From IMG/VR virus record IMGVR_UViG_3300005965_000002, positions 62,001-126,000 of that record: a DNA stretch of 64,000 bases; one strand, given 5' to 3'. Below the pieces are notes generated by a model. It had not been told where the DNA came from, made no database searches, and worked only from the letters and a program-made list of their open reading frames with translations. Shown here piece by piece: positions 4,588-39,699 of this stretch. The stretch's first letter is position 1, and every line of letters starts with the position of its first letter. Position numbers and translations under genes: made by a program.

Positions 4588-4662
4588 ATTAAGCCTCCAA
4601 AAATAAGTAAAGTTTCGAGCGCAAGAGATAATATACTTTTTTAAAATGCCCGGTTTAAAGCA

Positions 4663-5760
4663 TTAACTAAAAAAATTATCTACCGTGTTTACGCACAGAG
4701 TATCGATATCGTTGATATTAGGTGACTTAGGTAGAGTAGATTTCTTATACAATTCTGTGAGTTTTTGGTCACAATCATGGGCATACTGCTCTATTTTGTC
4801 ATATGACCAAGCTCCGTTTCTGATAGCCCGTAGCTCATCAGCATCAATATCCGTACGGTCTACGTTTACCTTTTCGGTTTCTAAGATCTCAAGACCCATC
4901 CTCAAGAGTCGGACCAAGTGTGCGGCGTTTTTAGCGTCAAATCCGTATTTTTCTTCAAGCTCAGCACGAGCCTTATTTCTGGATTTTTTCCATTCATAGT
5001 ATCTATCCCAGTCTCTTTTAGCTTCATAATAGGCAACCTCTTTTTTGGCTTCCTGTACGTATTCCTCTTTGAGGTAATTATCCCCGAGAGATATAAACGT
5101 ATTAGCCTGGGCTTTAATGCCACACTGCAGCCATTCCAGAGCAGTTTTTCTTTGCTCCGGGATCAAAAACTGGGTATACAGAGGAATTACATAATCCCCG
5201 TAAAGCCTGTCTAACTCATCCAAAAAATTCTGTTTCTCTTCTTCTATAATAAATTCCAGAGCGGCACTTACTACTGCTTTAAGCTGAGAAGTCGGAAATA
5301 TTGAGGGATTTCTTAGGCCAAACTCTTCTCTTTCGGGTGATTTTTTAGGAGGATCTAAAAGAAATTTTCTATGGGTTTTTATGCGGTTAAGTTGTGCAAT
5401 TGCATACCCGGAAAAAGTATACCTGCATCTCTTAGTCACGAAGATATCTCTGTTTTCAATAAAAGTATCCCAGTAAGGGCTTCGGGTAATAACACATCTG
5501 TCCGGCATCCATAAAAGATCCATCATATTAGGATTGTTATCGGAAATCAACCTTAGAGCTTTACGGATATCATAGCAAACGCGATCTTTTTCTTCGAACC
5601 CACGAAACTGTTCAAACTTTTGAAATCCGAAAAAATATTCTTTACCTGGAATCATGACGCCTGCTTTATCATAATCTGATTCGGCATGGTGTATACCGTA
5701 AGCTCTGCTGCCTACTACAGTCTCAAATATGATTCTGGGTAATACATAAGAAATTTCCAC
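4663..5760 (-). CDS. Pol-beta superfamily nucleotidyltransferase (Nuc-transf/YcgL/RlaP-like)
   Basis: GSRAYG..SDYD motif, NNPN, C-terminal GFDAKNAAHLVRL..IRNG. Confidence 0.8.
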   Translation of the reverse strand: MEISYVLPRIIFETVVGSRAYGIHHAESDYDKAGVMIPGKEYFFGFQKFEQFRGFEEKDRVCYDIRKALRLISDNNPNMMDLLWMPDRCVITRSPYWDTFIENRDIFVTKRCRYTFSGYAIAQLNRIKTHRKFLLDPPKKSPEREEFGLRNPSIFPTSQLKAVVSAALEFIIEEEKQNFLDELDRLYGDYVIPLYTQFLIPEQRKTALEWLQCGIKAQANTFISLGDNYLKEEYVQEAKKEVAYYEAKRDWDRYYEWKKSRNKARAELEEKYGFDAKNAAHLVRLLRMGLEILETEKVNVDRTDIDADELRAIRNGAWSYDKIEQYAHDCDQKLTELYKKSTLPKSPNINDIDTLCVNTVDNFFS

Positions 5761-26820: not shown

Positions 26821-27219
26821 TTATTTTTTTAGATTGGTAATGTTCAGCCCGCTACCGCTGTATATTTTTGAGTGGTTATTTATGAAATCTACAGTTTCAG
26901 GGTCATCTAGATCTCCCCAGAAGCATAGATTGCGTAAAGGGCTCTGCACAATCATTTTTACCTCATCCATGTGGGGGAAATATGAGGAAAAGATAGTTAT
27001 TCCCCCCGGATCACCAAAAGTATACTCGGATCGGAAATACTCCTGTAGAGCTTCAAACATCGGAGACTCATCGTAACCGTGTATAATTTCATTACTTACG
27101 GTTAGGATGACGTGAGGCCGGTCTCCAGCGATAATAACTGCTTTAGATTCTCCTGATTCGCGTATTCTTCCGGATTCGTATACAAGTCTTGCAAAGTAAT
27201 TCCATCTCCGTTCATCCAT
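26821..27219 (-). CDS. Degenerate dCMP/cytidine deaminase-fold protein
   Basis: AVII..N..TIFSSYFPHMDEVKMIVQS matches the TLYxTxxPCxxCxKxIxQS pattern; HAE and PCxxC are absent. Confidence 0.55.
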   Translation of the reverse strand: MDERRWNYFARLVYESGRIRESGESKAVIIAGDRPHVILTVSNEIIHGYDESPMFEALQEYFRSEYTFGDPGGITIFSSYFPHMDEVKMIVQSPLRNLCFWGDLDDPETVDFINNHSKIYSGSGLNITNLKK

Positions 27220-30200
27220 CCTCTGATCCTTTCGTCGAACAGAGTGTTTCTTCTCTGTATCCGATCATTATTAATCGCTTGCTCTATAGCTGATCCTTGC
27301 CCTAAGACCACAACTTTTTTCTTGGCCCTTGTAATGGCGGTATACAAAAGATTTCTCTGAAGAATTCTCTGACCATGGGCGCGTACAATAGGCAGGATAA
27401 TCAAGGGATATTCTAAGCCCTGACTATTATGGGTTACATACCCATTCATCACATATGTATTATCGTGTTCTACCTCAATATCATACATATCTACTTCAGG
27501 TAATTTTTCTACTGATATTACTTTATCATAATTATAATCACTATTGTAATATGTGTTTTCAAACTTATAAAATAAGGAATTACCCTCATTGTGTCCTATT
27601 TGAGGATTTCTCAAAGCGCACAGGTAGTCGCCGTTTTTTATATTTCCCGCTTCTTTAAAGTAGATTCCAGAGGTATTGGCTACAAGGTGCCTATGCTCAA
27701 AACTAGAATCTACAAATGCTCCTGATTTAGTAGTAATTCTATAAACTTCCTTTTTCCCCACATGTACCTTGGATATTACCCTTTTTTTATTATTTTTACC
27801 TGTTAGCACTATATCACCTTTTTTTATGTCAGATAAAGGTATTATCCCTCGTTCAGTAAAGATTTTATTGTATCCAGGAGCGCATTTGTGTACACTTATT
27901 GCATAAGCTAATTTAAGCATATCATCCGCAAGCTTCATGGGGATTTCTACTCGTTTTGTTTTCCCATCAAACTCATCAATATCAATAACAATATTTCCTT
28001 CTACTATTAAAACGACCTTACCAATATCTCCATTAAATACATCTAGGTAGTAGTTGTTCTTTTTGATTAGTACCCGGTCGCCTTTTCGAATTATCATCCG
28101 GTTTAAAGAAACCTCTTTTTTGTTATCTGCTGGAGGGTTTAGCACACTCTGAAGCGCTACGTTAAGCGTTTCTACACTCAGAGGGCCATTATTCCTCGGG
28201 GTGATAATCTGGAAAAGCGTGGGTTCCTTTTTCTTTTTGTTTCCGTCCTTTATATGCTGAGCAAACCGTATGATTGTTTCTTCGATTGTTCCCATATTCT
28301 TTTCACGAAGGAACCATATATCAGCATGCTTATCTCTTTTAAATAGGGAAAGATCCGTATTGCCGTCTCTTATCCTTTTAGCGGCTTTGATGATGTCAGA
28401 CTGCTCTTCCTGCCGGAATATGGTTCTAAGCTGAATGACTTTAAAGCATGCGCAGCTAATTAAGTGCTTAAGTACGGTACCTGGGCCTACAGAAGGTAGC
28501 TGGTCATTATCCCCGACGAACACAATCTTTGTGTGGGAGAATAAGGCAGAAACCAGCCTGAAGAACACCTCCATATCAACCATGGAAGTCTCATCTACAA
28601 TGACTACCTTTGTATTGTACTTATTCAGAGCATGGTAGTCCCATTTATCTCCTTTATACCCTAGCTGTCTGTGTATCGTGCGTGCATCATAATTAGCCGT
28701 TTTAGCCAGCTTTTTAGCAGATATGCCGGTAGGTGTCAGTAGGTCAAAGCTTATATTCTTTCTCACCATGAGTTCTACAAGAGCTTTAACAATTGTTGTA
28801 TTGTGAGTTACTGTGAAATCTCCTAAAACAAATCGACCGTTTCCTGATATTTGAAACCCATAATATTTACCCTTTCCTATGCTTTTAATTTGTATCCCAG
28901 TAACTAGATTATCTTTAATTTGTTTTCTTTCCTCGGCTGTTTTTTTCTTAACCTTCGTTGGTATCTTACATAGACCATTACCAGAAATAGTAGCACGGTA
29001 ATAAGTGCCCTCTCCTGAATAGTATTTCCCTTTACTAAAGCATGAAAAGGATTTTTTGCATGGTTTAGGGTAAGCGCTGAATCCTAATGATCTAGCGATG
29101 AAAACTACATCGTTTAAAAGCTTTTCACTCTTAAATATTATGTCATAGCAGTTTCCTCTTTTATCATAAGATCCATCAGAATCGATTATACCAGCTAAAA
29201 GATTGAGTCTTATTTCTTCGCTGTTGGCCTTATATAAGTGGGGGACAGTTTTTGCTATTGTCAGCCCAGATTCTTGTAGATAATTCCAAAAAAAATTGGG
29301 CTTTCTTTTTCCCTTTAATTCTCCGTATGCTTTTGAATCCATATCACGGGATATGTGGTATTCAATATTATCTCCACTAACTTTTTTTATTGAAATTTCT
29401 GTCCCTCTTAGTATGGTATCGATAGCCTCAACTACTTCGGTAAACGGAGTACTTATTCTTGAGGCGTCTATAGCGCCGTTTCCTAACCACATACCGAGTA
29501 GGTATGGATGTATAGGTATATCTTTTGTTGGAAATTTAACAGGCACTCTGTACCCTTTTAGCCTTTCACGAAAGCTCTTGGCTAAAGAAAAATAAGTGTC
29601 TATGGATATATCGTGTATTTTTCCTTTACCTGACCCAGCATAGGTTGATTGCTTTAGAGAGAGAATATGAGACCTATTTACGACGTACTTATCTCCCTTT
29701 TTAGGAATAACTTCAAAAAGTTCTTCTTCCCCAGTCGCCGTGGAAAGAACTACCCTGGGGGTAGAGTCATCCCCCATCAGAACATCGTTTGTCTTTATAT
29801 CTTGAACTTCTTTAATTGTACCATCATACATTAGAACGGGTGTCCCGTAGCCTAAGCATTTACCTGTACCCGGGGAGCCTGTAATCACCATTACTTTTTC
29901 TTTTGTGAAAGATCTAATAGATTCTTTTTGATCCTCACTAAGATCCATGTGGTGGGCTTTTTCGTACTCGGATATAAATTCTTCTACGTTGAAATCCCCA
30001 AAATCGCACTCATCGTGCTTATCATAGATTTTCTTAAGTAGCCTGGCACTTTCATTTTCATAGAAAAACATGTTTATGTCGTAGTACCGGTTTTCGTCCT
30101 GGTAAATAAAGCCATCCTTTACCAGTCCTTCTATATGAGGCTCTATCTCAGAAAAAAGAACAACACCATTTTTGAATGGGTACTCAGAACTTTTATTGTA

Positions 30201-30920
30201 ATCATTGAATAGCTTGCTGATTTCAGCAGGCTGCAGGAACAGGTGTCCGGACTGCATACAGCTACGAAGCATAAAAAGGATAAAGTATCGGTATCTTAGC
30301 GGGTCCTGCGGAGATTTGCCTAGTTTGTGCGCCAGGTAATCGCAAGTGGTGAATCCGAATCCTTCAAAGCTTAAAAGATAGGGATTCTGCTTGATGACTA
30401 ATTCGGCATTGTAGCTATATTTCGATATGATTTTTTCTATTTTGAACTTAGAAAGCCCGAGGCTATGGAGGAATACTTTTACGGATTTTAACTCTTTATT
30501 TTCCTTCCACGCCTCAACAATATTTTCTACTATTTTTTCGCCTATACCCTCGATCTCAGTTAATCTTTCCGGGGTATTTTCAATGATATCTTCTATATCT
30601 TCTTTCTTAAAGTGCTCCGCTATGTCTCGGGCTCTTTCGGGTCCAATCCATTTTGCGATGGACTGTAAGTAGAGATAAATTCCCTGTAGTGAGTTATCGT
30701 GTGCGAAGGTATGGCTGAGAGCTTTGAATGTCATCCCGTATTTAGGGTGATTGAAGAAATCACCATGCACATCTACCATAGCGTTAGGTAGAAGATTTGG
30801 GAAAGAACCGGAAACCGAAATCCTAGCTCCGTCTTTCTGCGCAAGTATAAAAATTTTGAAGTCACCGTCTTGCGATTCAAATTTTATTTTGTTTACTTTT
30901 CCGGTGATAGTTTCCATCAT
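27102..30920 (-). CDS. recD2: RecD2-like SF1B helicase with two inteins
   Basis: HhH repeats, GSPGTGK|T, PTG.SA, TIHR, DETSM, VGD.DQLPSV, RQ, NGDIG, HK|SQG.EY, LLYTAITRAK. Confidence 0.93.
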   Translation of the reverse strand: MMETITGKVNKIKFESQDGDFKIFILAQKDGARISVSGSFPNLLPNAMVDVHGDFFNHPKYGMTFKALSHTFAHDNSLQGIYLYLQSIAKWIGPERARDIAEHFKKEDIEDIIENTPERLTEIEGIGEKIVENIVEAWKENKELKSVKVFLHSLGLSKFKIEKIISKYSYNAELVIKQNPYLLSFEGFGFTTCDYLAHKLGKSPQDPLRYRYFILFMLRSCMQSGHLFLQPAEISKLFNDYNKSSEYPFKNGVVLFSEIEPHIEGLVKDGFIYQDENRYYDINMFFYENESARLLKKIYDKHDECDFGDFNVEEFISEYEKAHHMDLSEDQKESIRSFTKEKVMVITGSPGTGKCLGYGTPVLMYDGTIKEVQDIKTNDVLMGDDSTPRVVLSTATGEEELFEVIPKKGDKYVVNRSHILSLKQSTYAGSGKGKIHDISIDTYFSLAKSFRERLKGYRVPVKFPTKDIPIHPYLLGMWLGNGAIDASRISTPFTEVVEAIDTILRGTEISIKKVSGDNIEYHISRDMDSKAYGELKGKRKPNFFWNYLQESGLTIAKTVPHLYKANSEEIRLNLLAGIIDSDGSYDKRGNCYDIIFKSEKLLNDVVFIARSLGFSAYPKPCKKSFSCFSKGKYYSGEGTYYRATISGNGLCKIPTKVKKKTAEERKQIKDNLVTGIQIKSIGKGKYYGFQISGNGRFVLGDFTVTHNTTIVKALVELMVRKNISFDLLTPTGISAKKLAKTANYDARTIHRQLGYKGDKWDYHALNKYNTKVVIVDETSMVDMEVFFRLVSALFSHTKIVFVGDNDQLPSVGPGTVLKHLISCACFKVIQLRTIFRQEEQSDIIKAAKRIRDGNTDLSLFKRDKHADIWFLREKNMGTIEETIIRFAQHIKDGNKKKKEPTLFQIITPRNNGPLSVETLNVALQSVLNPPADNKKEVSLNRMIIRKGDRVLIKKNNYYLDVFNGDIGKVVLIVEGNIVIDIDEFDGKTKRVEIPMKLADDMLKLAYAISVHKCAPGYNKIFTERGIIPLSDIKKGDIVLTGKNNKKRVISKVHVGKKEVYRITTKSGAFVDSSFEHRHLVANTSGIYFKEAGNIKNGDYLCALRNPQIGHNEGNSLFYKFENTYYNSDYNYDKVISVEKLPEVDMYDIEVEHDNTYVMNGYVTHNSQGLEYPLIILPIVRAHGQRILQRNLLYTAITRAKKKVVVLGQGSAIEQAINNDRIQRRNTLFDERIRGWMNGDGITLQDLYTNPEEYANQENLKQLLSLETGLTSS
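27426..27884 (-). mobile_element. Mini-intein (153 aa) in RecD2 motif V
   Basis: SVHK|CAPGYNKIFT...YVTHN|SQGLEY; no endonuclease. Confidence 0.92.
28800..29858 (-). mobile_element. LAGLIDADG intein (353 aa) in RecD2 Walker A
   Basis: GTGK|CLGYGTPVLM...VTHN|TTIV; LLGMWLGNG and LLAGIIDSDG. Confidence 0.95.
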
Positions 30921-30935
30921 CGCCCTTAATAAGTA

Positions 30936-31244
30936 CTAGTTCAGAGAATCGTTATCTATCCTGGATTTTGGTATCTTTATCTTAATCCCTAAGATCAGCT
31001 TAAAACCCGCTAACGTTATAGATACAAGTGTCAGAAGAGCTGATAAGCAAGCTATAGCAACTACTAAAATAGCAGCTGTATCAGCTACAATCCAAGAAAT
31101 ATCTCTTATTCGTGATCCTTCAGATAGCCCAAAAAGGAAAAATGCTGAAAGGGCTATAGCTGGGATTACTAATAGAAGACCTTTGAAGAAAGAATTCATA
31201 AAAATACCTAAAAGGGGAGTGCTAACCCTCATGGTATGTAGCAC
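30936..31244 (-). CDS. Small membrane protein (two hydrophobic segments)
   Basis: Two long hydrophobic stretches; start may be the downstream MNSFF. Confidence 0.55.
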   Translation of the reverse strand: MLHTMRVSTPLLGIFMNSFFKGLLLVIPAIALSAFFLFGLSEGSRIRDISWIVADTAAILVVAIACLSALLTLVSITLAGFKLILGIKIKIPKSRIDNDSLN

Positions 31245-31265
31245 TCCCCGCCTCAGTTAGTGGTT

Positions 31266-31916
31266 TTAGTTCTGAATGTATTTACGATCAACGCGCACGA
31301 TGATATATTCACCAGGCTTGTACGTGGAGAATTTCATACCCTCACTGAATGCTTTTGCTGCATTAATTTCGAGGATTTCTACCCTGTCGCCCTCCCGTGT
31401 GGCAAACTTCGACGCAAAGTCGTTAGCCATCTCTGGAGTGTCATACAATTTGATGTACTTTTTTGTATGACTGCGTAGGCCTGTCTCCCGCATCCGACCT
31501 GCCAGGTTTTCCAGAGTACCAAAGTAAAGTGTATCAGGGGGTTGGACATACCGAACGATTTTGTACTTGATCTGGTTCTCCCCGTTGATGAGGATCTTCT
31601 GGTCTCTATCCTTGAAAAAGAACTCCACTACATGATTGTCATTGATGTAGTCAAGGTAAGGATGGAGGAAGACAACCACTTCTCTCATAGCCGGGATTGG
31701 TACGAATGCTTCTTGGTTATAAGGAAGCGAGTAGGATCTTCCTTCATTATCAAAAATCTCCAAGGAACCCGCGCAATTTTCACCATCACATTTGTCAGCT
31801 ACGCTCTTCAAAATATCAATAGAGCATAAAAGAGCTGTTTTGAGATCAGCGCTGCTTTTGAAAAGAGTTGGGGGTGACTTCTTAAACGGCGGTTTTTTGT
31901 TGTGATGCGGTATCAT
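31266..31916 (-). CDS. Degenerate RNA 2'-phosphotransferase (Tpt1/KptA)-like protein
   Basis: PPDTLYFGT..GL..KKYIKLY..ILEINA..GMKF..GEYI..V..KYI follows the KptA C-lobe pattern; start MIPHH has a GGAGG RBS. Confidence 0.7.
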   Translation of the reverse strand: MIPHHNKKPPFKKSPPTLFKSSADLKTALLCSIDILKSVADKCDGENCAGSLEIFDNEGRSYSLPYNQEAFVPIPAMREVVVFLHPYLDYINDNHVVEFFFKDRDQKILINGENQIKYKIVRYVQPPDTLYFGTLENLAGRMRETGLRSHTKKYIKLYDTPEMANDFASKFATREGDRVEILEINAAKAFSEGMKFSTYKPGEYIIVRVDRKYIQN

Positions 31917-31941
31917 TAACTTATCCTCCTGTGGTAGTTTA

Positions 31942-32373
31942 TTAGGATTCCGCTTTATTATTAGTATCACTACTAATGTTGGTTTCTTCTTCTTCTATTT
32001 CTTCTTCTTTTAGGGCTTCAGAGATATCAGATTCGGATAAAAGGACTTCTCTTTTAAGCAAACCAAATATCGTGGTATTTAGAAAACTGTTAACTACTCG
32101 GGTCTCTGTAAGAAGGTGCTGAATCATCTGGTTGATAGGAGATTCCTGATCCTTTAAAATATTCCTTACATTAGCCTTATCCCCATTAGCTAAACCAGAT
32201 AAAACTGTAGAGATATGCTCCATTGCTCGTACATTGAAGGAAATTTTCTTCTGAATAAAACCTTTCAGGTCTCGATTAATACCTTCCATGGAAAATGTAT
32301 AAGCTACTTCTTCTAACCGGCTATTATTCATTTCTTGATACTCTTGGAATTTCTTTTTGAGATCATCATTCAT
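31942..32373 (-). CDS. Hypothetical protein
   Basis: First ORF of the leftward block. Confidence 0.55.
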   Translation of the reverse strand: MNDDLKKKFQEYQEMNNSRLEEVAYTFSMEGINRDLKGFIQKKISFNVRAMEHISTVLSGLANGDKANVRNILKDQESPINQMIQHLLTETRVVNSFLNTTIFGLLKREVLLSESDISEALKEEEIEEEETNISSDTNNKAES

Positions 32374-32797
32374 ATTTTTAATCCTTAGGTGCAGTGATCA
32401 ACACTATGAATATACTGGTTTGCTCATTCTTTTTAAAGCGAATAAATGACATTTTTTGAGAAAATAAGAATATTTACTATTTTATAAACTGTATACTCGT
32501 TATTAATTATGACTTTTACCTTACCTAATAATTTACCAGAACCCAATATACTTTTTTAAATCATTACCTTACATATACTTTTTTAAAATTCAAAAAATAA
32601 AACCTATATATTAGTAATTATATTAATAATTACTCTTCTATTGTGTTTCCTCGAAGAGGAAATACAGTAGTAGCTATAAGAAATAAAGCTTAAACAGATG
32701 GCGACAAAAAATTAGAAAAAAGTTAGTAATGAGTAGATCTTACTTTAATTATGAAAATTTGATAAGTATATTGGAATAGATGTAAAGAAATCCAGGA
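32374..32797. promoter_or_regulatory. AT-rich divergent intergenic region at the strand switch (promoters, possible origin)
   Basis: Genes diverge here. Two ATATACTTTTTTAAA repeats, inverted repeat 32613-32634, hairpin 32638-32670, TTTGATAAGTATATTG at 32758. Confidence 0.6.
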
Positions 32798-33483
32798 GTG
32801 AATATGGGTCCTATTATAGTTATATCTGCTGATAAACTATCTCAATCAATGTTTTGTTCTTATTTATCCCAGATTTCCCTTATAGGGAAGGAAGTGGTAG
32901 TTAGAGATATAAATCTACTCTACTCCCCTGATGTTCAAGAGCAGATGATTGATGAATTTCTTACTCAGTTAGATAAAAGCCAACTATTGGTTGTTAAGTA
33001 TAAGATCAAAATAAATACTGATATGGATAAATTTAAGCTGCCGCCTAAAATACAGGATGCAGCATCTTATATTGTATTATTCGACATGTACTCCACCCAC
33101 CCTGAAGTATTAAAGGATACTCAGCAGTTTCCTAAGATACTTGATCGCTGGGAGGATTATATAAAAGGGCTCTCTTAGAGAGCTAACCCTCGTTTGAGAG
33201 AAGGTGAGCAAGGAGATAAGCAGCGGGATCGAGGCAGATTGACCGTGGTGGCTCCTGAAAATGCAAACCGGGCGGCTTATGAGGATTTTTAAAGGTCTTT
33301 TTAGGAAAAGGCCCCCTGCCGAAAGGCTGAGGAATTCTGCCAATAACTTACAGCCCGTAAATGCACGCGAAGCTGAGTGAGGCCCTGCCAGAAAGAAGCT
33401 TATAAATATCAAGCACTTAGGCAGGAAATAATACCAACTAAAGCCAAAACAGTAGTAGCCATCAGAAACAAAGCTTAAACAGA
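32664..33483 (+). repeat. 35-bp imperfect direct repeat (32664-32698 and 33449-33483)
   Basis: ACAGTAGTAGCTATAAGAAATAAAGCTTAAACAGA vs ACAGTAGTAGCCATCAGAAACAAAGCTTAAACAGA; 3 mismatches. Confidence 0.9.
32798..33178 (+). CDS. Hypothetical protein
   Basis: AGGAG RBS and promoter-like motif upstream. Confidence 0.6.
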   Translation: MNMGPIIVISADKLSQSMFCSYLSQISLIGKEVVVRDINLLYSPDVQEQMIDEFLTQLDKSQLLVVKYKIKINTDMDKFKLPPKIQDAASYIVLFDMYSTHPEVLKDTQQFPKILDRWEDYIKGLS

Positions 33484-33520
33484 AGAAACTCTGTTTCGGC
33501 GGGGTGCGTTAATCCCCTCG
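33169..33520 (+). ncRNA. Candidate structured non-coding RNA
   Basis: GC-elevated intergenic segment with many stems, including GCC-GAAA-GGC; family not recognised. Confidence 0.35.
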
Positions 33521-33549
33521 ACAAAAATTTTAGGTGAGGAATGTAACTC

Positions 33550-34563
33550 ATGTATTTCAAAGCCATTAAAGGCCATGGGGAAAATATTGCCCTGTTTAAA
33601 AAATGGGTGGTAGAAAACTCATTTGAAGGTGTTTATCTTTTTACAGGACCTAAAGGGGTAGGGAAATTTACAACGGCTCGCCAGCTCTGTAAATACATCC
33701 TGTGTACCGGAGTAAAAGATGATACCTGTCGCTGTGGAAGCTGTAAAATTTTTCCAGGCACCCCTGATTATCTGGAGATTAGTAAGGGTGGAGGAGAAAC
33801 TATTAAAGTTGCTGACGCAGAAAGCATAGACAATTTTACTAGTCTTCTTCCTTATAAAAGTAGAAAAAGGGTTGTGTTGATTGATGATGCAGAGAATCTA
33901 AACGTAAAAGCGGCTAATCGTCTACTAAAGGTGTTAGAAGATATAAAGAGCCATATGATTGTCATTTTGGTTTCTAGTAACCCGCATCTAATTCTCCCAA
34001 CTATTAAATCACGCACAACAGAAATTCCTTTCAGTCGCTTATCTGTGGAGGAATCTTTAGAGGTATTGAAGGATAGGGGCATGTCCGTTGGAAAAATTAA
34101 AGATATGTCCAAGGCTATACCATATTTGAGGGAAAGCATGCCTCGGGCAGGTCTTAAGTACTATGAGTATTATAAGTATGTACCCTCCTTCCTGGAGCTA
34201 ATGGTTTCTTCCAGTGAAGACGAAGTCTTGAGTGCTATTAAGAGTATAGAAGAAAATGAAAACATTTCTTATTTTGCCGAAATGTTAGTTGAGTACCTAT
34301 CTGACATGCTAAGGATAATGTACGATGCCGAGAACAACATACATTTTGATGCAAAGTTTAAGGAAATAGAGAAATTGACATTTTCTTGGAACGACGATCT
34401 ATGTATAGCATTTGCTAACCGCCTGCGAAACGCAATATCTGATTATGATCGAGGAATAAATTTGAAGTTGTATAATAGAGTACGCACAGCAGTATCCTGG
34501 GTTTACATTCTTCTCCAGAATCATTTGGGTAGGAAACAAAGTAAAGCCAAGGTTGCTCCATAG
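33550..34563 (+). CDS. holB: Clamp loader delta-prime subunit
   Basis: GPKGVGK, C-rich Zn module, IDDAENLN..AANRLLK.LE, LPTIKSR. Confidence 0.88.
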   Translation: MYFKAIKGHGENIALFKKWVVENSFEGVYLFTGPKGVGKFTTARQLCKYILCTGVKDDTCRCGSCKIFPGTPDYLEISKGGGETIKVADAESIDNFTSLLPYKSRKRVVLIDDAENLNVKAANRLLKVLEDIKSHMIVILVSSNPHLILPTIKSRTTEIPFSRLSVEESLEVLKDRGMSVGKIKDMSKAIPYLRESMPRAGLKYYEYYKYVPSFLELMVSSSEDEVLSAIKSIEENENISYFAEMLVEYLSDMLRIMYDAENNIHFDAKFKEIEKLTFSWNDDLCIAFANRLRNAISDYDRGINLKLYNRVRTAVSWVYILLQNHLGRKQSKAKVAP

Positions 34564-34571
34564 AGGAAATA

Positions 34572-35480
34572 ATGCCTAATAAGTATTTGATTACTGCTAA
34601 AGATTCATATTTTGCTCGTGAAAAAATTTTTCAGATAGCTGAAAAACACGATATACCGGATCCAAAAATTTTTGTAGAGCACAAGGACTTCATAGAGGAA
34701 GCCTACCAGGGTGACCTTTTTAATGATAGTCAAAAAGCCCTGGCTTTAATACCTCTTACAACAGAATCCCTGCCCCACATACTTAGTCTTTGTAACCAGA
34801 CTACTTCTGATGTTCTAATTCTAGTAGATTACGGTGGTCTATCCAAGAATCGAAACTACACAAAGATCAAAGCTCTTTGTGAGATTGTCCCGGTTAAAAA
34901 GTTTAGTGATAAAGAATCGGTTTCCTGGACAGCGGCTACCCTTAAAAACCACGCCTTTTCTTATGAGCCGGGCGTACCCGAGTTAGTAGCTGCTTATAAA
35001 GGACCTGATGCTCAAGGTATAATGAATGAGATAAAAAAGTTGGATTTGTATTTAGACGATAAAAAAGTTACAAAAAAAGTTTGTAAAACAATCATTTCCC
35101 GTGTAGGAGAGGGTAAAATGTTTGATTTTACAGAGCACTTCTTTAGAAAGCACAAAAAGGAAGTTATTGAGGAGTTTAATTCATTTTCAGAATCTTCATA
35201 TATAGGTTTGGTGCATCTACTGATTTCTCAGTGTGACCGGATATATAAGGTAGCTGTTTATAGAGAGCAAAAGATGTCAGCGGAAGAAATAGCAGAACTG
35301 ATAGGTATACCCCCTTTTATCATAAAGACTAAGATTTTTACAGCGCTGAATGTTTTTAATAAGGTAAAATTATTAAAGTTAATGGATATGTTTAATGAGC
35401 TAGATAAGCTCTTAAGATCATCTCCATATAATAAGAGATTGATGTTCGAGTCCTTTTTGCTGAAATCCTTTAACTTGTAA
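34572..35480 (+). CDS. holA: Clamp loader delta subunit
   Basis: NEIKKLDLY, FDF, GIPPFIIK, L.ELDKLLRS pattern of HolA. Confidence 0.78.
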   Translation: MPNKYLITAKDSYFAREKIFQIAEKHDIPDPKIFVEHKDFIEEAYQGDLFNDSQKALALIPLTTESLPHILSLCNQTTSDVLILVDYGGLSKNRNYTKIKALCEIVPVKKFSDKESVSWTAATLKNHAFSYEPGVPELVAAYKGPDAQGIMNEIKKLDLYLDDKKVTKKVCKTIISRVGEGKMFDFTEHFFRKHKKEVIEEFNSFSESSYIGLVHLLISQCDRIYKVAVYREQKMSAEEIAELIGIPPFIIKTKIFTALNVFNKVKLLKLMDMFNELDKLLRSSPYNKRLMFESFLLKSFNL

Positions 35481-35551
35481 TAATCTTTTTATTATTAAGG
35501 TAAAGCGGAGACTACAGTGACTGTAAGAAGCATAAAAAAAGGGTATGCCGG

Positions 35552-35872
35552 ATGAAAACGGGTGATCGTGGGGTTATAATAGAGATGGATCTGGACCAAC
35601 AAAGGTTAAAAGAATTGGTTAGTGAAGCTCTTAGGATAATTTACGAATTTATAGAAGGTGAGTATGTATACACAAAAGAAGATATAATGGGACAACTTGA
35701 AAGAATTTTGTCCACGAACCGTGTATCAGTTCCTTTTGTTTTAAATATAGGAAGTAAAAAAATTCCTGACTTGGAGCTTAAAGTAGAGCCTAGGCGAAAA
35801 AGATTGCTCTGCCACACTAAGTTTAGAAAAAAGATAGCTGTAGTTAATCAGATTTTAAGGACAATGAAATGA
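35552..35872 (+). CDS. Hypothetical protein
   Basis: ORF downstream of a copy of the late-type motif. Confidence 0.5.
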   Translation: MKTGDRGVIIEMDLDQQRLKELVSEALRIIYEFIEGEYVYTKEDIMGQLERILSTNRVSVPFVLNIGSKKIPDLELKVEPRRKRLLCHTKFRKKIAVVNQILRTMK

Positions 35873-36351
35873 TAGCCGAACCTTTATTTATTAGGTTTGT
35901 GAATGGTAAGATATCATCTCCAGGTATTATCGAATCCTTTAGGAATAATGCTGTAAATGATAAGACAAGAGATATAATAGAAGCAGCTACTGCTTCCCCT
36001 CCTAATTTAAGCGTTTTTAGAAAAGATTTTAGGAATTTATTAACAGATGTTATTGATAAAGGTATTACCCAGGATTTCATTAACTACGTAAATAGCTATA
36101 TGAAGCCCTCCATTGAGGAATATGTGCAGGGTTCGAGTGGTGGAAGGGCTGGTGAAAATAGGACGATAGGCATAAAGGATGAGGACACACCTTGGGTAGA
36201 GGCGGTAGTCTGTTATAATTTGTGCCTCTACATAAAAGTTGAGGGGATTGAGAAGATTAAACAGTGTGCTGTATGTAAAAAATTTTTCTGCCATAAAACT
36301 AAGTATGCCAAGTATTGTAATGATTCATGTAAGAGTAGAGGTAGAGAATGA
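35869..36351 (+). CDS. Protein with C-terminal CGNR-like Zn finger
   Basis: IKQCAVCKKFF..AKYCNDSC. Confidence 0.6.
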   Translation: MIAEPLFIRFVNGKISSPGIIESFRNNAVNDKTRDIIEAATASPPNLSVFRKDFRNLLTDVIDKGITQDFINYVNSYMKPSIEEYVQGSSGGRAGENRTIGIKDEDTPWVEAVVCYNLCLYIKVEGIEKIKQCAVCKKFFCHKTKYAKYCNDSCKSRGRE

Positions 36352-36872
36352 GGAAGAACCTCGTATTAGCTTTTGGCTTGCAGAATACTTACATGCATCA
36401 GGATGGCGCTATATCTTTAGGAGATAAAGCAGAAGTTTATAGATTCAGGATTAAAGATTATATACAGTCTTTAAATCAGGAAGTGAATAAGTTATACTTA
36501 TTAAGAGAAGTACACGCTCCTAATGATACTTTTTTCTGCCGCGACCGTACTCATTCTTTAGTCGGGAGTAAAGATGTAGAGGTCCCTGAAGTATTTAAAT
36601 CATATTTTAAATTTATCATCAATACGACACGATATAACGCTTTATATAAGACACCATTAGAATCAGAGATATTTAAAATTGACCCGGAAAAAATAGTATT
36701 GATAGGATTTGAAACCCATACTAATATCCTTTTTACTGCTGAGGAGTTAAGAAATAGAGGATATAATGTAACGGTAATTGAGCCTCTAGCAGCATCCAGA
36801 GATTTGACCTTGCATGCCTCAGCGATATCTCTATTAAGTGACACACTGTCTGTTTCTATTAGTCAGGAGTAA
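36348..36872 (+). CDS. Isochorismatase/nicotinamidase-fold protein lacking the catalytic triad
   Basis: LQNTY..DGAI, E.H, H..VGS, RYNALYKT.LE, GFET..IL.TA..RGY.V.V. Asp, Lys and Cys are replaced by Gly, Thr and Asn. Confidence 0.8.
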   Translation: MRKNLVLAFGLQNTYMHQDGAISLGDKAEVYRFRIKDYIQSLNQEVNKLYLLREVHAPNDTFFCRDRTHSLVGSKDVEVPEVFKSYFKFIINTTRYNALYKTPLESEIFKIDPEKIVLIGFETHTNILFTAEELRNRGYNVTVIEPLAASRDLTLHASAISLLSDTLSVSISQE

Positions 36873-36875
36873 GTT

Positions 36876-37193
36876 ATGGTAGCAATATTTCAGTACAAAA
36901 TACAGTGTCCCTATTGCGATACAGAAATATCTTTAGTTGCGGAAGAATCGAATCCAATAATTTTTCCCTGCAAAGGATGTAGCAATCATATTGTAATAGA
37001 GGGTAATATCGTGTACAATGTTCCATCTAATGTAGCACAGAGAGTAATGAAAAGGGTTAAAGTCAAACAGTGTGGCCAGGTAGTGAAGTCAAAACTTAAC
37101 CCTAAACATGTCATAACTCAGAAAGAGATAGATGACTTGCACGAAATGCTTGAAAATAATAGTACTATAGAGGATTTTTTAAAACAACTTTAA
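36876..37193 (+). CDS. Zn-ribbon protein
   Basis: CPYC..CKGC. Confidence 0.6.
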   Translation: MVAIFQYKIQCPYCDTEISLVAEESNPIIFPCKGCSNHIVIEGNIVYNVPSNVAQRVMKRVKVKQCGQVVKSKLNPKHVITQKEIDDLHEMLENNSTIEDFLKQL

Positions 37194-37206
37194 AAAATAG
37201 TACATA

Positions 37207-37659
37207 ATGTATATATTAAGGTATATGGAAGATAAAGAACTTGACGGAAAACTGGTATACCTTACAATCCATTTTGAAAATTGGTTAAAACAGGTAAATC
37301 CTGCATTTAACGTCCCTATGGCTAATAGGTTAGCTAAGGTGATTAAAGTCTTCGATTGGGATACAGAAGAGGGTCAGATACTGCTAGCCGAGAGGGAAAA
37401 GACTGGTAAGTGGAAAAATCTAGATCCCAAAGACTTTAAATTTGTCCTTAAGGTATACTACCCCGAATTAGTCTTAAAAGGCAAAGTCAGAGGCTTCTCC
37501 GCCCAGGAGCTTGCTTGTAGGTATTACCCGGGCAAGGATATAACTATGTTTGAGCCGCTGCCAGATTCCCTAGTAAAAGAATTAGTGCGACAAGAAAAAA
37601 ACATACTGAAGGTAGAAAAAAGAAATGTATCTGGATCCGTTCGTAAGAAGAGCAAATGA
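37207..37659 (+). CDS. Hypothetical protein
   Basis: ORF in operon; start may be the downstream MEDKE. Confidence 0.55.
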   Translation: MYILRYMEDKELDGKLVYLTIHFENWLKQVNPAFNVPMANRLAKVIKVFDWDTEEGQILLAEREKTGKWKNLDPKDFKFVLKVYYPELVLKGKVRGFSAQELACRYYPGKDITMFEPLPDSLVKELVRQEKNILKVEKRNVSGSVRKKSK

Positions 37660-38317
37660 AGCTATTTTTCGATACGAGGAACCTTTAGAATATCTAAACG
37701 ACAGAGGAATAACAAAAGACGAAATAAGAAAATATTCTTTAGGTTACTTGAATATTGCCAATATAAAAGATGATGAAACCGAAGAATACAAAAGATTTAA
37801 AGAACAGACCTACAATTTTAGGGCCCTCGAAAAAAAGTTACTGATTCCCTTAAAAAATATTCTCGGTAAAGTGAATGGTGTCATTACCAGGGACTTGAAA
37901 GAAAAACGATACAAACAGTTTTTCTTGAAAGAAGCAAAGGATATAGGCACCTTTTTTGGATTGTATGAGGCTCTGCCGGAAATATGTAAGCAGAGGAAAG
38001 TCTTCGTTCACGAGGGAGCGATAGACGCGATTTCTTTTGCGAAAGTTTTTCCAAATAGTATTTCTGTACTAACTTCTCGAATTAACGAATGCCAATACGA
38101 GACATTGCGTTTTTTCGCTGATACGATTATCTTAGTTTTCGATGAGGATAGCCCGGGTAAGCACGGCGTAGATACAATGTATAAACTGTTTGGTAAGAAA
38201 CATCTTTATACAGTTTCGATTGGGTTTAACGATTCAAATGCATGCTTACAAAGAATGGGGCTCGAATCTTTTAAAAGATATATGAGGAACAAAGTCCCTC
38301 TTTTATTAAGAAATTAA
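37625..38317 (+). CDS. DnaG-type primase catalytic core (TOPRIM)
   Basis: YLNDRGIT, IPLKN..G, VHEGAIDAIS, FDEDSPG; no Zn-binding domain. Confidence 0.82.
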   Translation: MYLDPFVRRANEAIFRYEEPLEYLNDRGITKDEIRKYSLGYLNIANIKDDETEEYKRFKEQTYNFRALEKKLLIPLKNILGKVNGVITRDLKEKRYKQFFLKEAKDIGTFFGLYEALPEICKQRKVFVHEGAIDAISFAKVFPNSISVLTSRINECQYETLRFFADTIILVFDEDSPGKHGVDTMYKLFGKKHLYTVSIGFNDSNACLQRMGLESFKRYMRNKVPLLLRN

Positions 38318-38343: not shown

Positions 38344-39699
38344 ATGTCGGGTACAAAGTATCGTCCATTAGATTTTAATAGCGTATTGGGATTGGATTCT
38401 ATCAAGCTTATTCTCCAAAGAATAATTGATAGAAAGGAATTCGATCCCGCTTACTTATTCAGCGGTGACTTTTCTACTGGAAAAACTACCCTGGGAAGAA
38501 TATTCGTTCGGAGTGTCTTCTGCACCAACCGTAAAAAGGATATGTCCCCATGTAATGAGTGCTCGTCTTGTAAAGACTTTTTATCAGAGCGCCACCCCGG
38601 TTATATTGAGATTGATGCAGCTAATAATGGATCAAAGGAAAAAATAAAAGAGATCAGAGAAAAGCTTTCGTACGAGTCTGTAACAAGCAGGATATTTATT
38701 TTATTTGATGAATGTCATAATATTAGTAAAGAAGGAAACGACGCATTACTTAAGGAGTTAGAGAAAGACAGGGATAACGTACATTTTATTTTTTGCACCA
38801 CAGAATTAGATAAGATGCCCCCGCCTTTAAGATCGAGATGCATACAATTTGAAATACACCAGCCTACTGAAGAAAATATACGTAAAAAGTTAGAGTTTAT
38901 TTGTAAGAAGGAAAATATTAATTATGAGCTTGAGGCTTTAAGATTAATAGTTCAGTCCACCGGCAGGCATTACCGTGACTCTGAGAATAAGCTTAGACAA
39001 GTATCTTTCTTAGGGGATATATCTCTTGAGAATACTAAAAAAGTAACGTGTGTGTACGAAGAAGAAATAGCAAGGATGTTAATTTATCTTTCAGATGATG
39101 TAAACATTGCTATGGAAATTTGTGATTACTTAGTAGAAAGAATGAATGTAAAAAATATCTATCAGACAATACTTAGACTCATAGTAGATGGTATTAAGCT
39201 GCTGCAGGGTGACATGGAAGTTGATAACTCAGCTATGTCGTATATGAATGATTTAGTACGGCAATACGGAGATTCGTTATATGAAATGCTAGATTTCATA
39301 TTATCAAAAGGAAGATTTACAGATTTAACATTTCTCCAATCCGACCTCTTATTAATGCACTATAAATTCCTCAGATGTCAATTCGATTCAAAGGCACTCG
39401 CGCCACAAGCCGCATCAGTATCAGCACCAAATAAAGATCAAGATCAAAAAATAGTATCAAGAAATAAGATGGAAAAATTAAAACAAGCAGGATCCTCTTG
39501 GGAACGTGCTGAGATGATGCGGAAATTACGTAATGAAAAAAATAAGACAAAGAAAGATGATAGAGTAGAAGAAGCCGTATCAAAGGCATGGGGTCCTGAA
39601 GTGGATTCTTTTGGGACAGAGTCGGTGTTTAAAAGGGAGATATCTCCTACTGACTTTATGAAAAAAATTGGAGGAGCTCTGGATGATAACAAGATCTAG
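38344..39699 (+). CDS. dnaX: Clamp loader gamma/tau subunit
   Basis: KYRP..F, G..STGKTT, PCNECSSC, EIDAA, DECH, LLKELE, SRC, G.YRD. Confidence 0.92.
   Translation: MSGTKYRPLDFNSVLGLDSIKLILQRIIDRKEFDPAYLFSGDFSTGKTTLGRIFVRSVFCTNRKKDMSPCNECSSCKDFLSERHPGYIEIDAANNGSKEKIKEIREKLSYESVTSRIFILFDECHNISKEGNDALLKELEKDRDNVHFIFCTTELDKMPPPLRSRCIQFEIHQPTEENIRKKLEFICKKENINYELEALRLIVQSTGRHYRDSENKLRQVSFLGDISLENTKKVTCVYEEEIARMLIYLSDDVNIAMEICDYLVERMNVKNIYQTILRLIVDGIKLLQGDMEVDNSAMSYMNDLVRQYGDSLYEMLDFILSKGRFTDLTFLQSDLLLMHYKFLRCQFDSKALAPQAASVSAPNKDQDQKIVSRNKMEKLKQAGSSWERAEMMRKLRNEKNKTKKDDRVEEAVSKAWGPEVDSFGTESVFKREISPTDFMKKIGGALDDNKI

What the first reader, a model, noticed from the sequence alone, without database searches (positions are those of the whole stretch)
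26821..36872. Three catalytically dead nucleotide/NAD-enzyme folds kept as intact genes: a candidate decoy or sponge set
Seen: three full-length uninterrupted ORFs keep fold-defining residues but lack the catalytic ones: deaminase-like (26821-27219), Tpt1/KptA-like (31266-31916) and nicotinamidase-like (36348-36872). Targeted loss without frameshifts suggests repurposing rather than decay. Established: the parent folds bind dCMP, NAD+/ADP-ribose and nicotinamide, which are molecules at the centre of nucleotide-depletion and NAD-signal defences, and phages encode non-catalytic sponge proteins. Inference: together with pncB-nadE, these may form an undescribed counter-defence or metabolite-sensing layer, or be co-opted replisome/transcription subunits.
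Basis: partly seen in the sequence, partly recalled or inferred. Interest (0 to 1): 0.85.

Follow-up and report, generated by a model that had tools for sequence, protein, structure and literature searches.

The report
Three conserved dead-enzyme genes in phage replisome
A huge environmental phage keeps three intact genes whose proteins have the shapes of a dCMP deaminase, an RNA 2'-phosphotransferase and a nicotinamidase but lack their catalytic residues. All three sit at fixed places inside the phage's DNA replication and recombination operons, so they look like repurposed binding or accessory proteins rather than a defence-decoy cassette.

Summary
All three ORFs are intact. Their folds are confirmed at high confidence: dCMP-deaminase, two-lobed Tpt1/KptA, and PncA-type isochorismatase. 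The catalytic residues of each parent enzyme are replaced in the window and across each family (17, 31 and 25 aligned homologues). None is decaying: dN/dS is 0.01-0.05 for the Tpt1-like and PncA-like genes and about 0.19 for the deaminase-like gene. The genes do not form a cassette, and they lie 22-32 kb from pncB-nadE. They occupy fixed slots in two divergent core operons that are conserved in at least 12 independent huge-phage contigs. The PncA-like gene always lies between clamp-loader delta'/delta and primase/tau, flanked by two small zinc-finger genes. The Tpt1-like gene lies just upstream of a RecD2 helicase. The deaminase-like gene starts 112-136 nt (289 in one lineage) inside the RecD2 3' end in every locus that has it. 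No similarity to defence-system proteins was found. Most residues that contact NAD+ in Tpt1 are replaced. Best reading: three independent pseudoenzyme families co-opted as non-catalytic accessory or ligand-binding modules of the phage replication-recombination machinery. The sponge/decoy reading is not excluded, but genomic context does not favour it. No prior description was found.

The parts
26821..27219 (-). Deaminase-fold pseudoenzyme (132 aa), derived from the dCMP-deaminase subfamily. It has no Zn ligands and no catalytic Glu.
   Evidence: AF2 pLDDT 90.5. Foldseek finds dCMP deaminases in the PDB and BFVD. Profile alignment to 4p9c, 2w4l, 7fh4 and 2hvv. Column counts. dN/dS about 0.19 outside the overlap.
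27102..27219 (-). Out-of-frame overlap of 118 nt between the RecD2 3' end and the deaminase-like start. An AAGGA Shine-Dalgarno-like site lies 7 nt upstream of the ATG.
   Evidence: The overlap is 112-136 nt (289 in one lineage) in every locus carrying both genes. Sequence. dS is depressed in the overlap, as expected for dual coding.
27102..30920 (-). RecD2-type SF1 helicase (1272 aa) interrupted by two inteins. Its conserved C-terminal tail ends in ...QLLSLE...
   Evidence: Pfam AAA_30, HHH_RecD2, SH3_13, UvrD_C_2, Intein_splicing and Hom_end. Relatives lack roughly residues 356-704 and 1013-1160. Tail conservation.
31266..31916 (-). Tpt1/KptA-fold pseudoenzyme (216 aa, pI 8.3). The R-H-R-R tetrad and the HGT histidine are replaced. 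K152, K156, Y118 and F132 are invariant and E203 is in 30/31.
   Evidence: AF2 pLDDT 91.6. Foldseek top 21 hits are all Tpt1/KptA. Profile alignment, counts. dN/dS 0.045.
36348..36872 (+). PncA-type isochorismatase-fold pseudoenzyme (174 aa). The Asp-Lys-Cys triad reads G10/T93/N126. Pocket-lining residues Q12, E54, D60, F62, R95, E122, T123 and H124 are conserved.
   Evidence: Pfam PF00857 48.3 bits. Profile against nicotinamidases. ESM Atlas TM 0.92. Counts. dN/dS 0.013-0.037.
33550..35480 (+). Clamp-loader delta' (33550-34563) and delta (34572-35480), at the start of the operon that contains the PncA-like gene.
   Evidence: Pfam DNA_pol3_delta2 and DNA_pol3_delta_C. Synteny.
35552..36351 (+). 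orf106 and orf160, upstream partners of the PncA-like gene. orf160 has a C-terminal Cys-rich zinc finger and resembles ABATE/zf-CGNR. Its stop overlaps the PncA-like start by 4 nt.
   Evidence: Conserved next to the PncA-like gene in all loci.
36876..38317 (+). orf105 (CxxC...CxxC zinc ribbon), orf150 and a DnaG-type primase core (Toprim plus DNAG_N, with no zinc-binding domain).
   Evidence: Synteny.
38344..39699 (+). Clamp-loader tau/gamma-like ATPase, the downstream boundary of the conserved block.
   Evidence: Pfam DNA_pol3_delta2, AAA and DNAX lid.

Best explanation
These are three unrelated pseudoenzyme families, derived from dCMP deaminase, from Tpt1/KptA and from PncA nicotinamidase. 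Each was fixed as a non-catalytic accessory module of the replication-recombination machinery in one clade of huge phages.

Shown:
- The parent chemistries are abolished in every family member.
- The proteins fold confidently.
- They are under purifying selection.
- They occupy invariant slots in core operons.

Inferred mechanism:
- The deaminase-like protein is made by coupled translation from within the RecD2 3' end and acts with that helicase. It may serve as a nucleotide- or ssDNA-binding or regulatory partner.
- The basic Tpt1-like protein keeps a phosphate-binding cleft (Y118, K152, K156 and an Arg in half of the family). It may use its nucleic-acid lobe, which is duplicated in some relatives, to bind DNA or RNA ends for the adjacent RecD2/RecA/RuvC/SbcCD module.
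- The PncA-like protein is translationally chained between two small zinc-finger proteins and a primase core that lacks a zinc-binding domain. It probably works as a subunit or small-molecule-binding regulator of the primase/clamp-loader assembly.
For: - Folds are confirmed.
- Family-wide loss of catalytic residues. Residue roles are taken from PMC10622864 and PMC3581539.
- Selection: the Tpt1-like gene has omega 0.045 and the PncA-like gene 0.013-0.037. Primase, delta' and RecD2 have 0.04-0.08. The deaminase-like gene has about 0.19 outside the overlap.
- Synteny: the order tau-primase-orf150-orf105-ISO-orf160-orf106-delta-delta' <> orf143-TPT-RecD2-DEAM-orf390-orf212-RuvC-RecA is kept in at least 12 distinct contigs whose neighbours share only 25-60% identity.
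- The PncA-like gene is in the same slot in contigs of 173-469 kb. The same holds for its most divergent members, P0068 and P0070.
- The RecD2/deaminase-like overlap is conserved in all loci that carry both genes, and a Shine-Dalgarno-like site lies upstream of the start.
- Genes are tightly packed, with 4-nt start/stop overlaps.
- Zinc-finger neighbours and a split primase.
- No PADLOC similarity.
Against: - No physical interaction or binding was tested. Synteny and translational coupling may reflect only co-expression.
- The deaminase-like gene is absent from three lineages (L004, L019, L021) although the RecD2 tail is kept. It evolves faster than its neighbours, so it behaves more like an accessory gene.
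- A more distant relative, LR745208.1, has the tau-sigma-TerL block but none of the three genes in the 41.6-kb stretch around tau that was examined. This type of replisome therefore probably does not need them.
- In the PncA-like family, the residues homologous to the nicotinamide pocket are the most conserved ones. That points to ligand binding or new chemistry rather than a purely structural role.
Confidence: 0.42

Rival explanations
1. Neo-functionalised enzymes. One or more of the three proteins catalyses a different reaction with a new set of residues. In the Tpt1-like family the candidates are invariant Y118, K152 and K156 with E203 (30/31). E203 occupies the strand-start slot where H-Y-E ADP-ribosyltransferases carry their catalytic Glu. 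In the PncA-like family the candidates are Q12, E54, D60, R95, E122 and H124.
For: Conserved polar residues cluster at positions homologous to the old active sites. Purifying selection is as strong as on true enzymes. The P0067-P0070 subgroup of the PncA-like family keeps the Lys and has Ser at the Cys slot.
Against: The slots of the PncA nucleophile and acid are variable, not replaced by a new conserved residue (G/C/S/N/K and N/S/I/T/L/H/M). The deaminase-like family has almost no invariant polar residues. The FGT motif removes the His that the ART superfamily uses to hold NAD+. The E203 assignment rests on a sequence-profile alignment only.
Confidence: 0.2
2. Metabolite sensors. The proteins keep part of the parent ligand pocket and couple replication or recombination to the state of the NAD/nicotinamide or pyrimidine-nucleotide pool. 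For example, they might sense NAD+ breakdown or dNTP depletion.
For: PncA-like pocket residues are conserved: Q12, Y15, E54, D60, F62, Y96, G120 and T130, at positions equivalent to OiNIC T12, F15, D54, Y107, G131 and T141. The window protein keeps E54/H56/H69 at the metal-site positions. The phage makes a bona fide PncB and an NadE, so NAD supply matters to it. The genes are placed inside replication operons.
Against: The metal ligands are not conserved across the family (H56 in 21/25, H69 in 17/25). The NAD-contact residues of Tpt1 are replaced. No ligand binding was tested. The pncB-nadE linkage could not be checked in relatives, because one search found only the window's own contig.
Confidence: 0.17
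3. Counter-defence sponges or decoys. The proteins would sequester immune signals or NAD-derived molecules, or poison host defence enzymes of the same fold by forming mixed oligomers.
For: The parent folds bind dCMP/dCTP, NAD+/ADPR and nicotinamide (established knowledge). Non-catalytic phage sponges exist (own knowledge). The deaminase-like gene is patchily distributed and evolves faster, as many anti-defence genes do.
Against: The genes hold fixed core-operon positions across very divergent phages rather than sitting in variable accessory islands. There is no similarity to defence proteins in PADLOC. The NAD-contact residues of Tpt1 and the Zn site of the deaminase are gone. The three genes are not linked to each other or to pncB-nadE as a unit. 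Where the PncA-like gene occurs without the other two within 10 kb, it keeps its slot.
Confidence: 0.13
4. Decaying relics of once-active phage enzymes, drifting neutrally.
For: Catalytic residues are lost. The deaminase-like gene is lost altogether in some lineages.
Against: dN/dS is 0.01-0.2. The genes are intact in all loci. The AF2 models are confident. Family-specific invariant motifs exist.
Confidence: 0.02

Closest known systems
Tpt1/KptA RNA 2'-phosphotransferase (Pfam PF01885; structures 6e3a/6ede, 8tfi, 9ld4)
   Same: It has the same two-lobed architecture: an N-terminal winged-helix nucleic-acid lobe and a C-terminal ART-type NAD lobe. It keeps the PP-x-LY-x-GT motif and the Tyr that contacts the phosphate. 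All top Foldseek and profile hits are Tpt1.
   Different: [quoted passage not shown] HGT has become FGT, and the His of VHLS has become Lys. The residues that contact NAD+ are replaced. The protein scores below the Pfam gathering score and far below the NCBIfam equivalog cut-offs (43.5 against 239 bits). Some members have a duplicated N-lobe.
PncA nicotinamidase / isochorismatase-like cysteine hydrolases (PF00857; 6kua, 3s2s, 5zn8, 3o94)
   Same: It has the same fold (TM about 0.9) and scores above the Pfam gathering score. Its closest sequences are the Firmicute-type nicotinamidases. The Gly before the cis-peptide and several pocket residues are conserved.
   Different: The Asp-Lys-Cys triad is absent (Asp 0/25, Lys 4/25, Cys 0/25). 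The metal ligands are only partly kept. A family-specific, highly conserved ETH(T/S)-x-ILFTAEELRNRGY helix is present. The gene is always embedded in a clamp-loader/primase operon rather than with NAD-salvage genes.
dCMP deaminase (phage T4 Cd, cyanophage S-TIM5, human DCTD; CDA fold)
   Same: It has the same alpha/beta fold and the same order of secondary-structure elements. It keeps the Pro of PCxxC and the A-L of the HAExNAL helix. Only dCMP deaminases are recovered by the family profile.
   Different: There is no Zn-binding His/Cys/Cys and no catalytic Glu (S-P-[VIM] and P-[SH]-x-x-E instead). The GYNG motif is missing. There is no Pfam hit. The gene start is buried in the 3' end of a helicase gene.
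Non-catalytic accessory subunits of bacterial replisomes (for example clamp-loader chi/psi). This is an analogy from own knowledge only.
   Same: These are small alpha/beta proteins without catalytic function that are associated with clamp-loader genes.
   Different: There is no sequence or tested structural relationship, and association with the complex is not shown here.
Phage sponge proteins (Tad1, Tad2, Acb2). Comparison from own knowledge.
   Same: They are small non-catalytic phage proteins whose proposed role is to bind nucleotide-derived small molecules.
   Different: The folds are unrelated. Known sponges were not retrieved by any search here. The genomic context is core replication operons rather than accessory or early anti-defence regions.

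Membership tests
Tpt1/KptA RNA 2'-phosphotransferase | Two-lobed Tpt1 fold | tested here: met
   AF2 pLDDT 91.6. The 21 Foldseek PDB hits with E<1e-3 are all Tpt1/KptA.
Tpt1/KptA RNA 2'-phosphotransferase | [quoted passage not shown] | tested here: not met
   I35-L36 (by spacing), Q106 (family R16/Q9/H6) and K152 (31/31).
Tpt1/KptA RNA 2'-phosphotransferase | HGT motif and the His/Thr/Arg residues that contact NAD+ | tested here: not met
   F132-G-T. The His119 equivalent is K156 and the Thr130 equivalent is F167. The Arg133 slot is variable.
Tpt1/KptA RNA 2'-phosphotransferase | Curated HMM cut-offs (Pfam GA 26; NCBIfam equivalog 231-279 bits) | tested here: not met
   21 bits; 43.5 bits.
Nicotinamidase / isochorismatase-like hydrolase | Isochorismatase fold and Pfam PF00857 gathering score | tested here: met
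   48.3 bits against 27. ESM Atlas TM 0.92 to PncA clusters. Profile E 1e-15 to nicotinamidases.
Nicotinamidase / isochorismatase-like hydrolase | Asp-Lys-Cys catalytic triad (OiNIC D10/K104/C137; PMC3581539) | tested here: not met
   G10/T93/N126 in the window. Across the family, Asp 0/25, Lys 4/25, Cys 0/25.
Nicotinamidase / isochorismatase-like hydrolase | Asp-His-His metal site | tested here: inconclusive
   The window has E54/H56/H69. In the family, E54 is in 25/25, H56 in 21/25 and H69 in 17/25. Metal binding was not tested.
dCMP/cytidine deaminase (CDA) superfamily | Deaminase alpha/beta fold | tested here: met
   AF2 pTM 0.86. TM 0.62-0.71 to dCMP deaminases. BFVD and the ESM Atlas agree.
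dCMP/cytidine deaminase (CDA) superfamily | [HC]-A-E and P-C-x-x-C zinc and catalytic motifs | tested here: not met
   S52-P53-M54 and P82-H83-x-x-E86. No family member has the His/Cys/Cys ligands or the Glu.
Phage anti-defence sponge/decoy | High-affinity binding of an immune signal or metabolite, or inhibition of a defence protein | not testable with these tools
   This needs binding and plating assays.
Phage anti-defence sponge/decoy | Resemblance to a defence-system component (for a decoy) and location in variable accessory regions | tested here: not met
   PADLOC gave no meaningful hits. The genes hold fixed slots in core operons.
Replisome/recombination accessory subunit | Conserved operon linkage with replisome or helicase genes | tested here: met
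Replisome/recombination accessory subunit | Physical association with RecD2, primase or clamp loader | not testable with these tools
   No complex prediction or pull-down was available.

The most novel reading that the evidence does not exclude
The PncA-derived pseudoenzyme is a nicotinamide/NAD-metabolite receptor built into a split primase/clamp-loader assembly. The other two pseudoenzymes are nucleotide or DNA-end receptors on the RecD2 recombination machine. Together they would form a metabolite-sensing layer that lets a huge phage gate or re-route replication when host NADase or nucleotide-depletion defences fire. This would be a new functional class of phage pseudoenzymes.
Probability: 0.1. 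Interest if true: 0.85.

Novelty: new variant of a known kind. Interest (0 to 1): 0.55.

Why it matters
Pseudoenzymes are well known in eukaryotic signalling but have hardly been catalogued in phages. This window holds three clean cases. Each has a confident fold, family-wide loss of catalytic residues, strong purifying selection and invariant placement in core replication and recombination operons of an uncultured huge-phage clade.

The cases give concrete, testable entry points into three questions:
- How huge phages build their own Pol III-type replisome and split primase.
- What a RecD2 helicase does with a translationally coupled deaminase-fold partner.
- Whether nucleotide/NAD-binding folds are recycled as sensors.

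They also correct database annotation. The proteins are labelled 'RNA:NAD 2'-phosphotransferase' and 'nicotinamidase-related amidase', and the deaminase-like gene is truncated to 79 aa. These labels would wrongly suggest that the phage carries a complete Preiss-Handler NAD-salvage route.

Tried and rejected
- Megablast of the region against INPHARED phages gave no match. tblastn with the three proteins found nothing useful there.
- Single-sequence Pfam and PDB searches for the deaminase-like ORF found nothing. The fold only emerged from the ESM Atlas, an exhaustive HMMER search, and AF2 with Foldseek.
- PHROGs gave only an 'RNA 2'-phosphotransferase' label and an unknown-function family.
- PADLOC gave no defence-system similarity.
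- The search for related loci with the deaminase-like alignment failed because no conserved stretch was available.
- The search for related loci with PncB returned only the window's own contig, so co-occurrence of pncB-nadE with the three genes could not be assessed.
- The look-up of encoding contigs for P0075 and P0085 gave only very short contigs.
- dN/dS between the window and its nearest fetched relatives is saturated (dS undefined). Closer pairs among the relatives were used instead.
- Literature searches for phage pseudo-nicotinamidases, pseudo-deaminases or Tpt1-like pseudoenzymes found no prior description. The phage G 'PncA-like' gene mentioned in PMC12484599 was not among the phage records matched at E<=1e-3.
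- I considered a programmed frameshift fusing RecD2 to the deaminase-like domain. I found no support for it. The deaminase frame is open for only 15 codons upstream of its ATG. The conserved 'MD-R-R' start and the Shine-Dalgarno-like site favour independent initiation.
- None of the three genes contains an in-frame stop, so no read-through was needed.

Full report
**What the window is**

The 64-kb window is part of IMG/VR contig IMGVR_UViG_3300005965_000002 (258,580 bp). This is an uncultured huge phage. It encodes the following:
- a large terminase;
- a ribonucleotide reductase with an intein;
- RecA, RuvC and SbcCD-like proteins;
- a beta-clamp-like protein (weak Pfam match, below the gathering score);
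- clamp-loader delta', delta and tau;
- a DnaG-type primase core, a flap endonuclease and a sigma factor;
- a bona fide PncB and an intein-containing glutamine-dependent NadE.

It has no close relative among deposited phage genomes. The nearest terminases belong to a 485-kb uncultured phage (LR745208.1, 35% identity) and to Tunturiibacter phage Tunturi_5.

**Checking the observation**

All three ORFs are intact at the stated coordinates.

*Deaminase-like ORF, 26821-27219(-).*
- The single sequence has no Pfam or PDB sequence match.
- An exhaustive HMMER search found 29 relatives. I aligned 16 relatives with the window protein (alignment A3).
- An AlphaFold2 model built on that alignment is confident (pLDDT 90.5, pTM 0.86).
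- Its best structural matches in the PDB are dCMP deaminases: human, PBCV-1, S. mutans, cyanophage S-TIM5 and T4 (TM 0.62-0.71). The BFVD viral library and the ESM Atlas give the same answer.
- The family profile retrieves only dCMP deaminases from the PDB. It places S52-P53-M54 on the H-A-E motif and P82-H83-x-x-E86 on P-C-x-x-C. These positions sit at the N-termini of the two helices in the model, where CDA-fold zinc ligands are found.
- Across 17 sequences, no member has the His/Cys/Cys ligands. The catalytic Glu slot is always hydrophobic.
- The public gene call of 79 aa (P0072) is truncated. Homologues and the fold begin at the upstream Met.

*Tpt1-like ORF, 31266-31916(-).*
- It scores below Pfam's gathering score.
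- It belongs to a family for which the homologue search returned 35 proteins (alignment A1).
- The AF2 model has pLDDT 91.6. The 21 significant PDB matches are all Tpt1/KptA.
- I used the profile alignment to C. thermocellum and P. horikoshii Tpt1 together with the residue roles described in PMC10622864. The third tetrad Arg is Q106 in the window (R16/Q9/H6 in the family). The fourth Arg is K152 (31/31). The HGT histidine that packs on nicotinamide is F132 (31/31). The His of VHLS is K156 (31/31). The Thr130 equivalent is F167.
- By conserved spacing to the D-x-x-G-[FW] element, the N-terminal Arg-His pair corresponds to I35-L36. This step is inference.
- Y118 is retained. It is equivalent to the Tyr that hydrogen-bonds the phosphate.
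- E203 (30/31) occupies the strand-start slot where Tpt1 has Val.

*PncA-like ORF, 36348-36872(+).*
- It passes the Pfam isochorismatase threshold.
- The homologue search returned 35 proteins for its family (alignment A2).
- Its profile is closest to Firmicute-type nicotinamidases (E 1e-15 to 1e-12). The ESM Atlas model (pTM 0.92) superposes on PncA clusters at TM 0.92.
- Against the nicotinamidase features listed in PMC3581539, the Asp-Lys-Cys triad reads G10/T93/N126. In the family, Asp is kept in 0/25, Lys in 4/25 and Cys in 0/25.
- Several pocket-lining positions are invariant or nearly so: Q12, E54, D60, F62, R95, G120, E122, T123, H124 and T130.
- The metal-site positions are E54 (25/25), H56 (21/25) and H69 (17/25).

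**Decay or function?**

I computed Nei-Gojobori dN/dS on the closest available pairs of relatives.
- L029/L030 (dS about 0.2): 0.045 for the Tpt1-like gene and 0.013 for the PncA-like gene. Primase gives 0.062 and delta' 0.078.
- L002/L014: 0.037 for the PncA-like gene, the same as RecD2.
- Deaminase-like gene outside its overlap with RecD2: about 0.19.

Amino-acid identity of the Tpt1-like and PncA-like proteins to relatives tracks that of RecA, tau and primase. These are selected genes, not relics.

**Genomic context**

The three genes do not form a cassette. They lie on either side of a divergent intergenic region at about 32.4-33.5 kb, which coincides with the cumulative GC-skew minimum.

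The conserved gene order is tau-primase-orf150-orf105-PncA-like-orf160-orf106-delta-delta'-orf126 <> orf143-Tpt1-like-RecD2-deaminase-like-orf390-orf212-RuvC-RecA.

- This order is preserved in at least 12 distinct viral and metagenomic contigs whose shared proteins are only 25-60% identical.
- The PncA-like gene occupies the same slot in four further contigs of 24-470 kb where the other two genes are not within 10 kb.
- It also keeps the slot in the most divergent members, P0068 and P0070.
- It is chained to orf160 by a 4-nt start/stop overlap.
- Its neighbours are a C-terminal zinc-finger protein (orf160, ABATE/zf-CGNR-like) and a CxxC...CxxC zinc-ribbon protein (orf105).
- Downstream lies a primase core that lacks a zinc-binding domain. 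The arrangement looks like a split primase.

In every locus that has the deaminase-like gene, its ATG lies 112-136 nt (289 in one lineage) inside the RecD2 3' end, out of frame. A Shine-Dalgarno-like AAGGA lies 7 nt upstream in the window. Synonymous divergence is depressed in the overlap, as expected for dual coding.

The RecD2 tail is conserved even in the three lineages that lack the deaminase-like gene. A more distant relative, LR745208.1, has the tau-sigma-TerL block but none of the three genes in the 41.6-kb stretch around tau that was examined. The families are therefore innovations of one subclade.

**Interpretation**

The evidence favours co-option of three nucleotide/NAD-enzyme folds as non-catalytic modules tied to the replication-recombination machinery. 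The supporting features are fixed core-operon positions, translational coupling, replisome-like selection, and the basic, Lys-rich, partly phosphate-competent cleft of the Tpt1-like protein. The nucleic-acid lobe of that protein is duplicated in several relatives (L003).

The 'decoy/sponge set with pncB-nadE' reading is weaker, for these reasons:
- There is no cassette, and pncB-nadE is 22-32 kb away.
- There is no similarity to defence components.
- The genes are core rather than accessory in placement.
- The NAD-contact residues of Tpt1 are replaced.
- The zinc site of the deaminase is gone.

The reading is not excluded. It is most plausible for the PncA-like protein, whose conserved residues map onto the former nicotinamide pocket, and for the faster-evolving, patchily distributed deaminase-like protein. 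A third possibility is new chemistry using the family-specific conserved polar residues.

My confidences are: accessory/binding modules of the replication-recombination machinery 0.42; neo-enzymes 0.20; metabolite sensors 0.17; sponges/decoys 0.13; relics 0.02.

**Comparison with known families**

Each protein has the fold of its parent family but fails that family's defining catalytic features, so none should be filed as a member (see the membership table). Public annotations ('RNA:NAD 2'-phosphotransferase', 'nicotinamidase-related amidase') are therefore misleading. In particular, the phage cannot be assumed to have a PncA step feeding its PncB-NadE pathway.

Literature searches found no description of these families or of an equivalent arrangement.

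**Verdict**

This is a real and well-supported set of three new pseudoenzyme families, a new variant of a known kind. Their placement in a huge-phage replisome is interesting and conserved, and the helicase/pseudo-deaminase gene overlap is unusual and conserved. The mechanism remains inferred. The counter-defence headline is not supported by the data at hand. Interest 0.55.

Noticed in passing
window 27102-27219 (and L002, L003, L014, L018, L023, L030, L033, L035, L040): The deaminase-like gene starts 112-136 nt (289 in L003) inside the 3' end of the RecD2 gene, out of frame, in every locus that has both genes. dS in the overlap is about 0.14-0.38, against about 0.9 outside it.
   Followed up: yes
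window 27102-27300 (RecD2 C-terminal tail): RecD2 carries a conserved C-terminal extension of about 60 aa that ends in ...NLKQLLSLE... (relatives have ERLLSLEE or NRLLSLEG). It is kept even where the deaminase-like gene is absent. It could be a peptide that binds a partner such as the clamp or SSB.
   Followed up: partly
window 3-2960(-), 5986-9519(+), 27102-30920(-), 52696-56139(+): The window is rich in inteins. NadE has one intein with a LAGLIDADG domain. The RNR large subunit has one with an HNH domain. RecD2 has two (about aa 356-704 with a homing endonuclease, and about aa 1013-1160). The 1147-aa protein at 52696-56139 also contains a LAGLIDADG intein.
   Followed up: partly
window 2971-5760(-): PncB is bona fide (NCBIfam 489 bits against a cut-off of 379) but has an N-terminal extension of about 120 aa. 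It is followed by an RlaP-type Pol-beta nucleotidyltransferase (4663-5760). No NadD or active PncA was seen among the window ORFs scanned. Whether the NTase substitutes for NadD is unknown.
   Followed up: no
window 32661-32698 and 33446-33483 (+): A 38-nt direct repeat (89% identical; the 35-nt core is found only twice in the window, against 0 expected) lies upstream of orf126 and upstream of delta'. It sits in the divergent intergenic region at the cumulative GC-skew minimum. It is a candidate promoter, operator or origin element.
   Followed up: partly
window 35869-38317 (+): The primase appears to be split. The 230-aa primase has Toprim and DNAG_N domains but no zinc-binding domain. Upstream are orf105 (CxxC...CxxC zinc ribbon) and orf160 (C-terminal Cys-rich finger, ABATE/zf-CGNR-like by ESM Atlas structure).
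   Followed up: partly
P0016, P0018, P0019, P0021, P0024, P0026, P0031; L003 10001-10837: A subgroup of Tpt1-like homologues (270-321 aa) carries a tandem duplication of the N-terminal nucleic-acid-binding lobe.
   Followed up: no
P0067-P0070 (PncA-like family); L047 8001-8510: The most divergent PncA-like members keep the catalytic-slot Lys and have Ser at the Cys slot and Cys or Asn at the Asp slot. This may be an intermediate or alternative state. They sit in the same primase/clamp-loader operon.
   Followed up: partly
P0072 (public gene call for window 26821-27060): Automatic gene calling truncated the deaminase-like protein to 79 aa, presumably to avoid the overlap with RecD2. The 132-aa form is supported by homologues and by the fold.
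   Followed up: yes
P0013 (NCBI: MAG Candidatus Altiarchaeales archaeon): A Tpt1-like homologue with 55% identity is deposited under an archaeal MAG name on a 41.8-kb contig. This is probably a mis-binned phage contig.
   Followed up: no
window 30936-31244(-): orf102 is a hydrophobic 102-aa ORF between the Tpt1-like gene and RecD2. tblastn found it only in the window's own contig, so it may be a lineage-specific insertion or may not be a gene.
   Followed up: no
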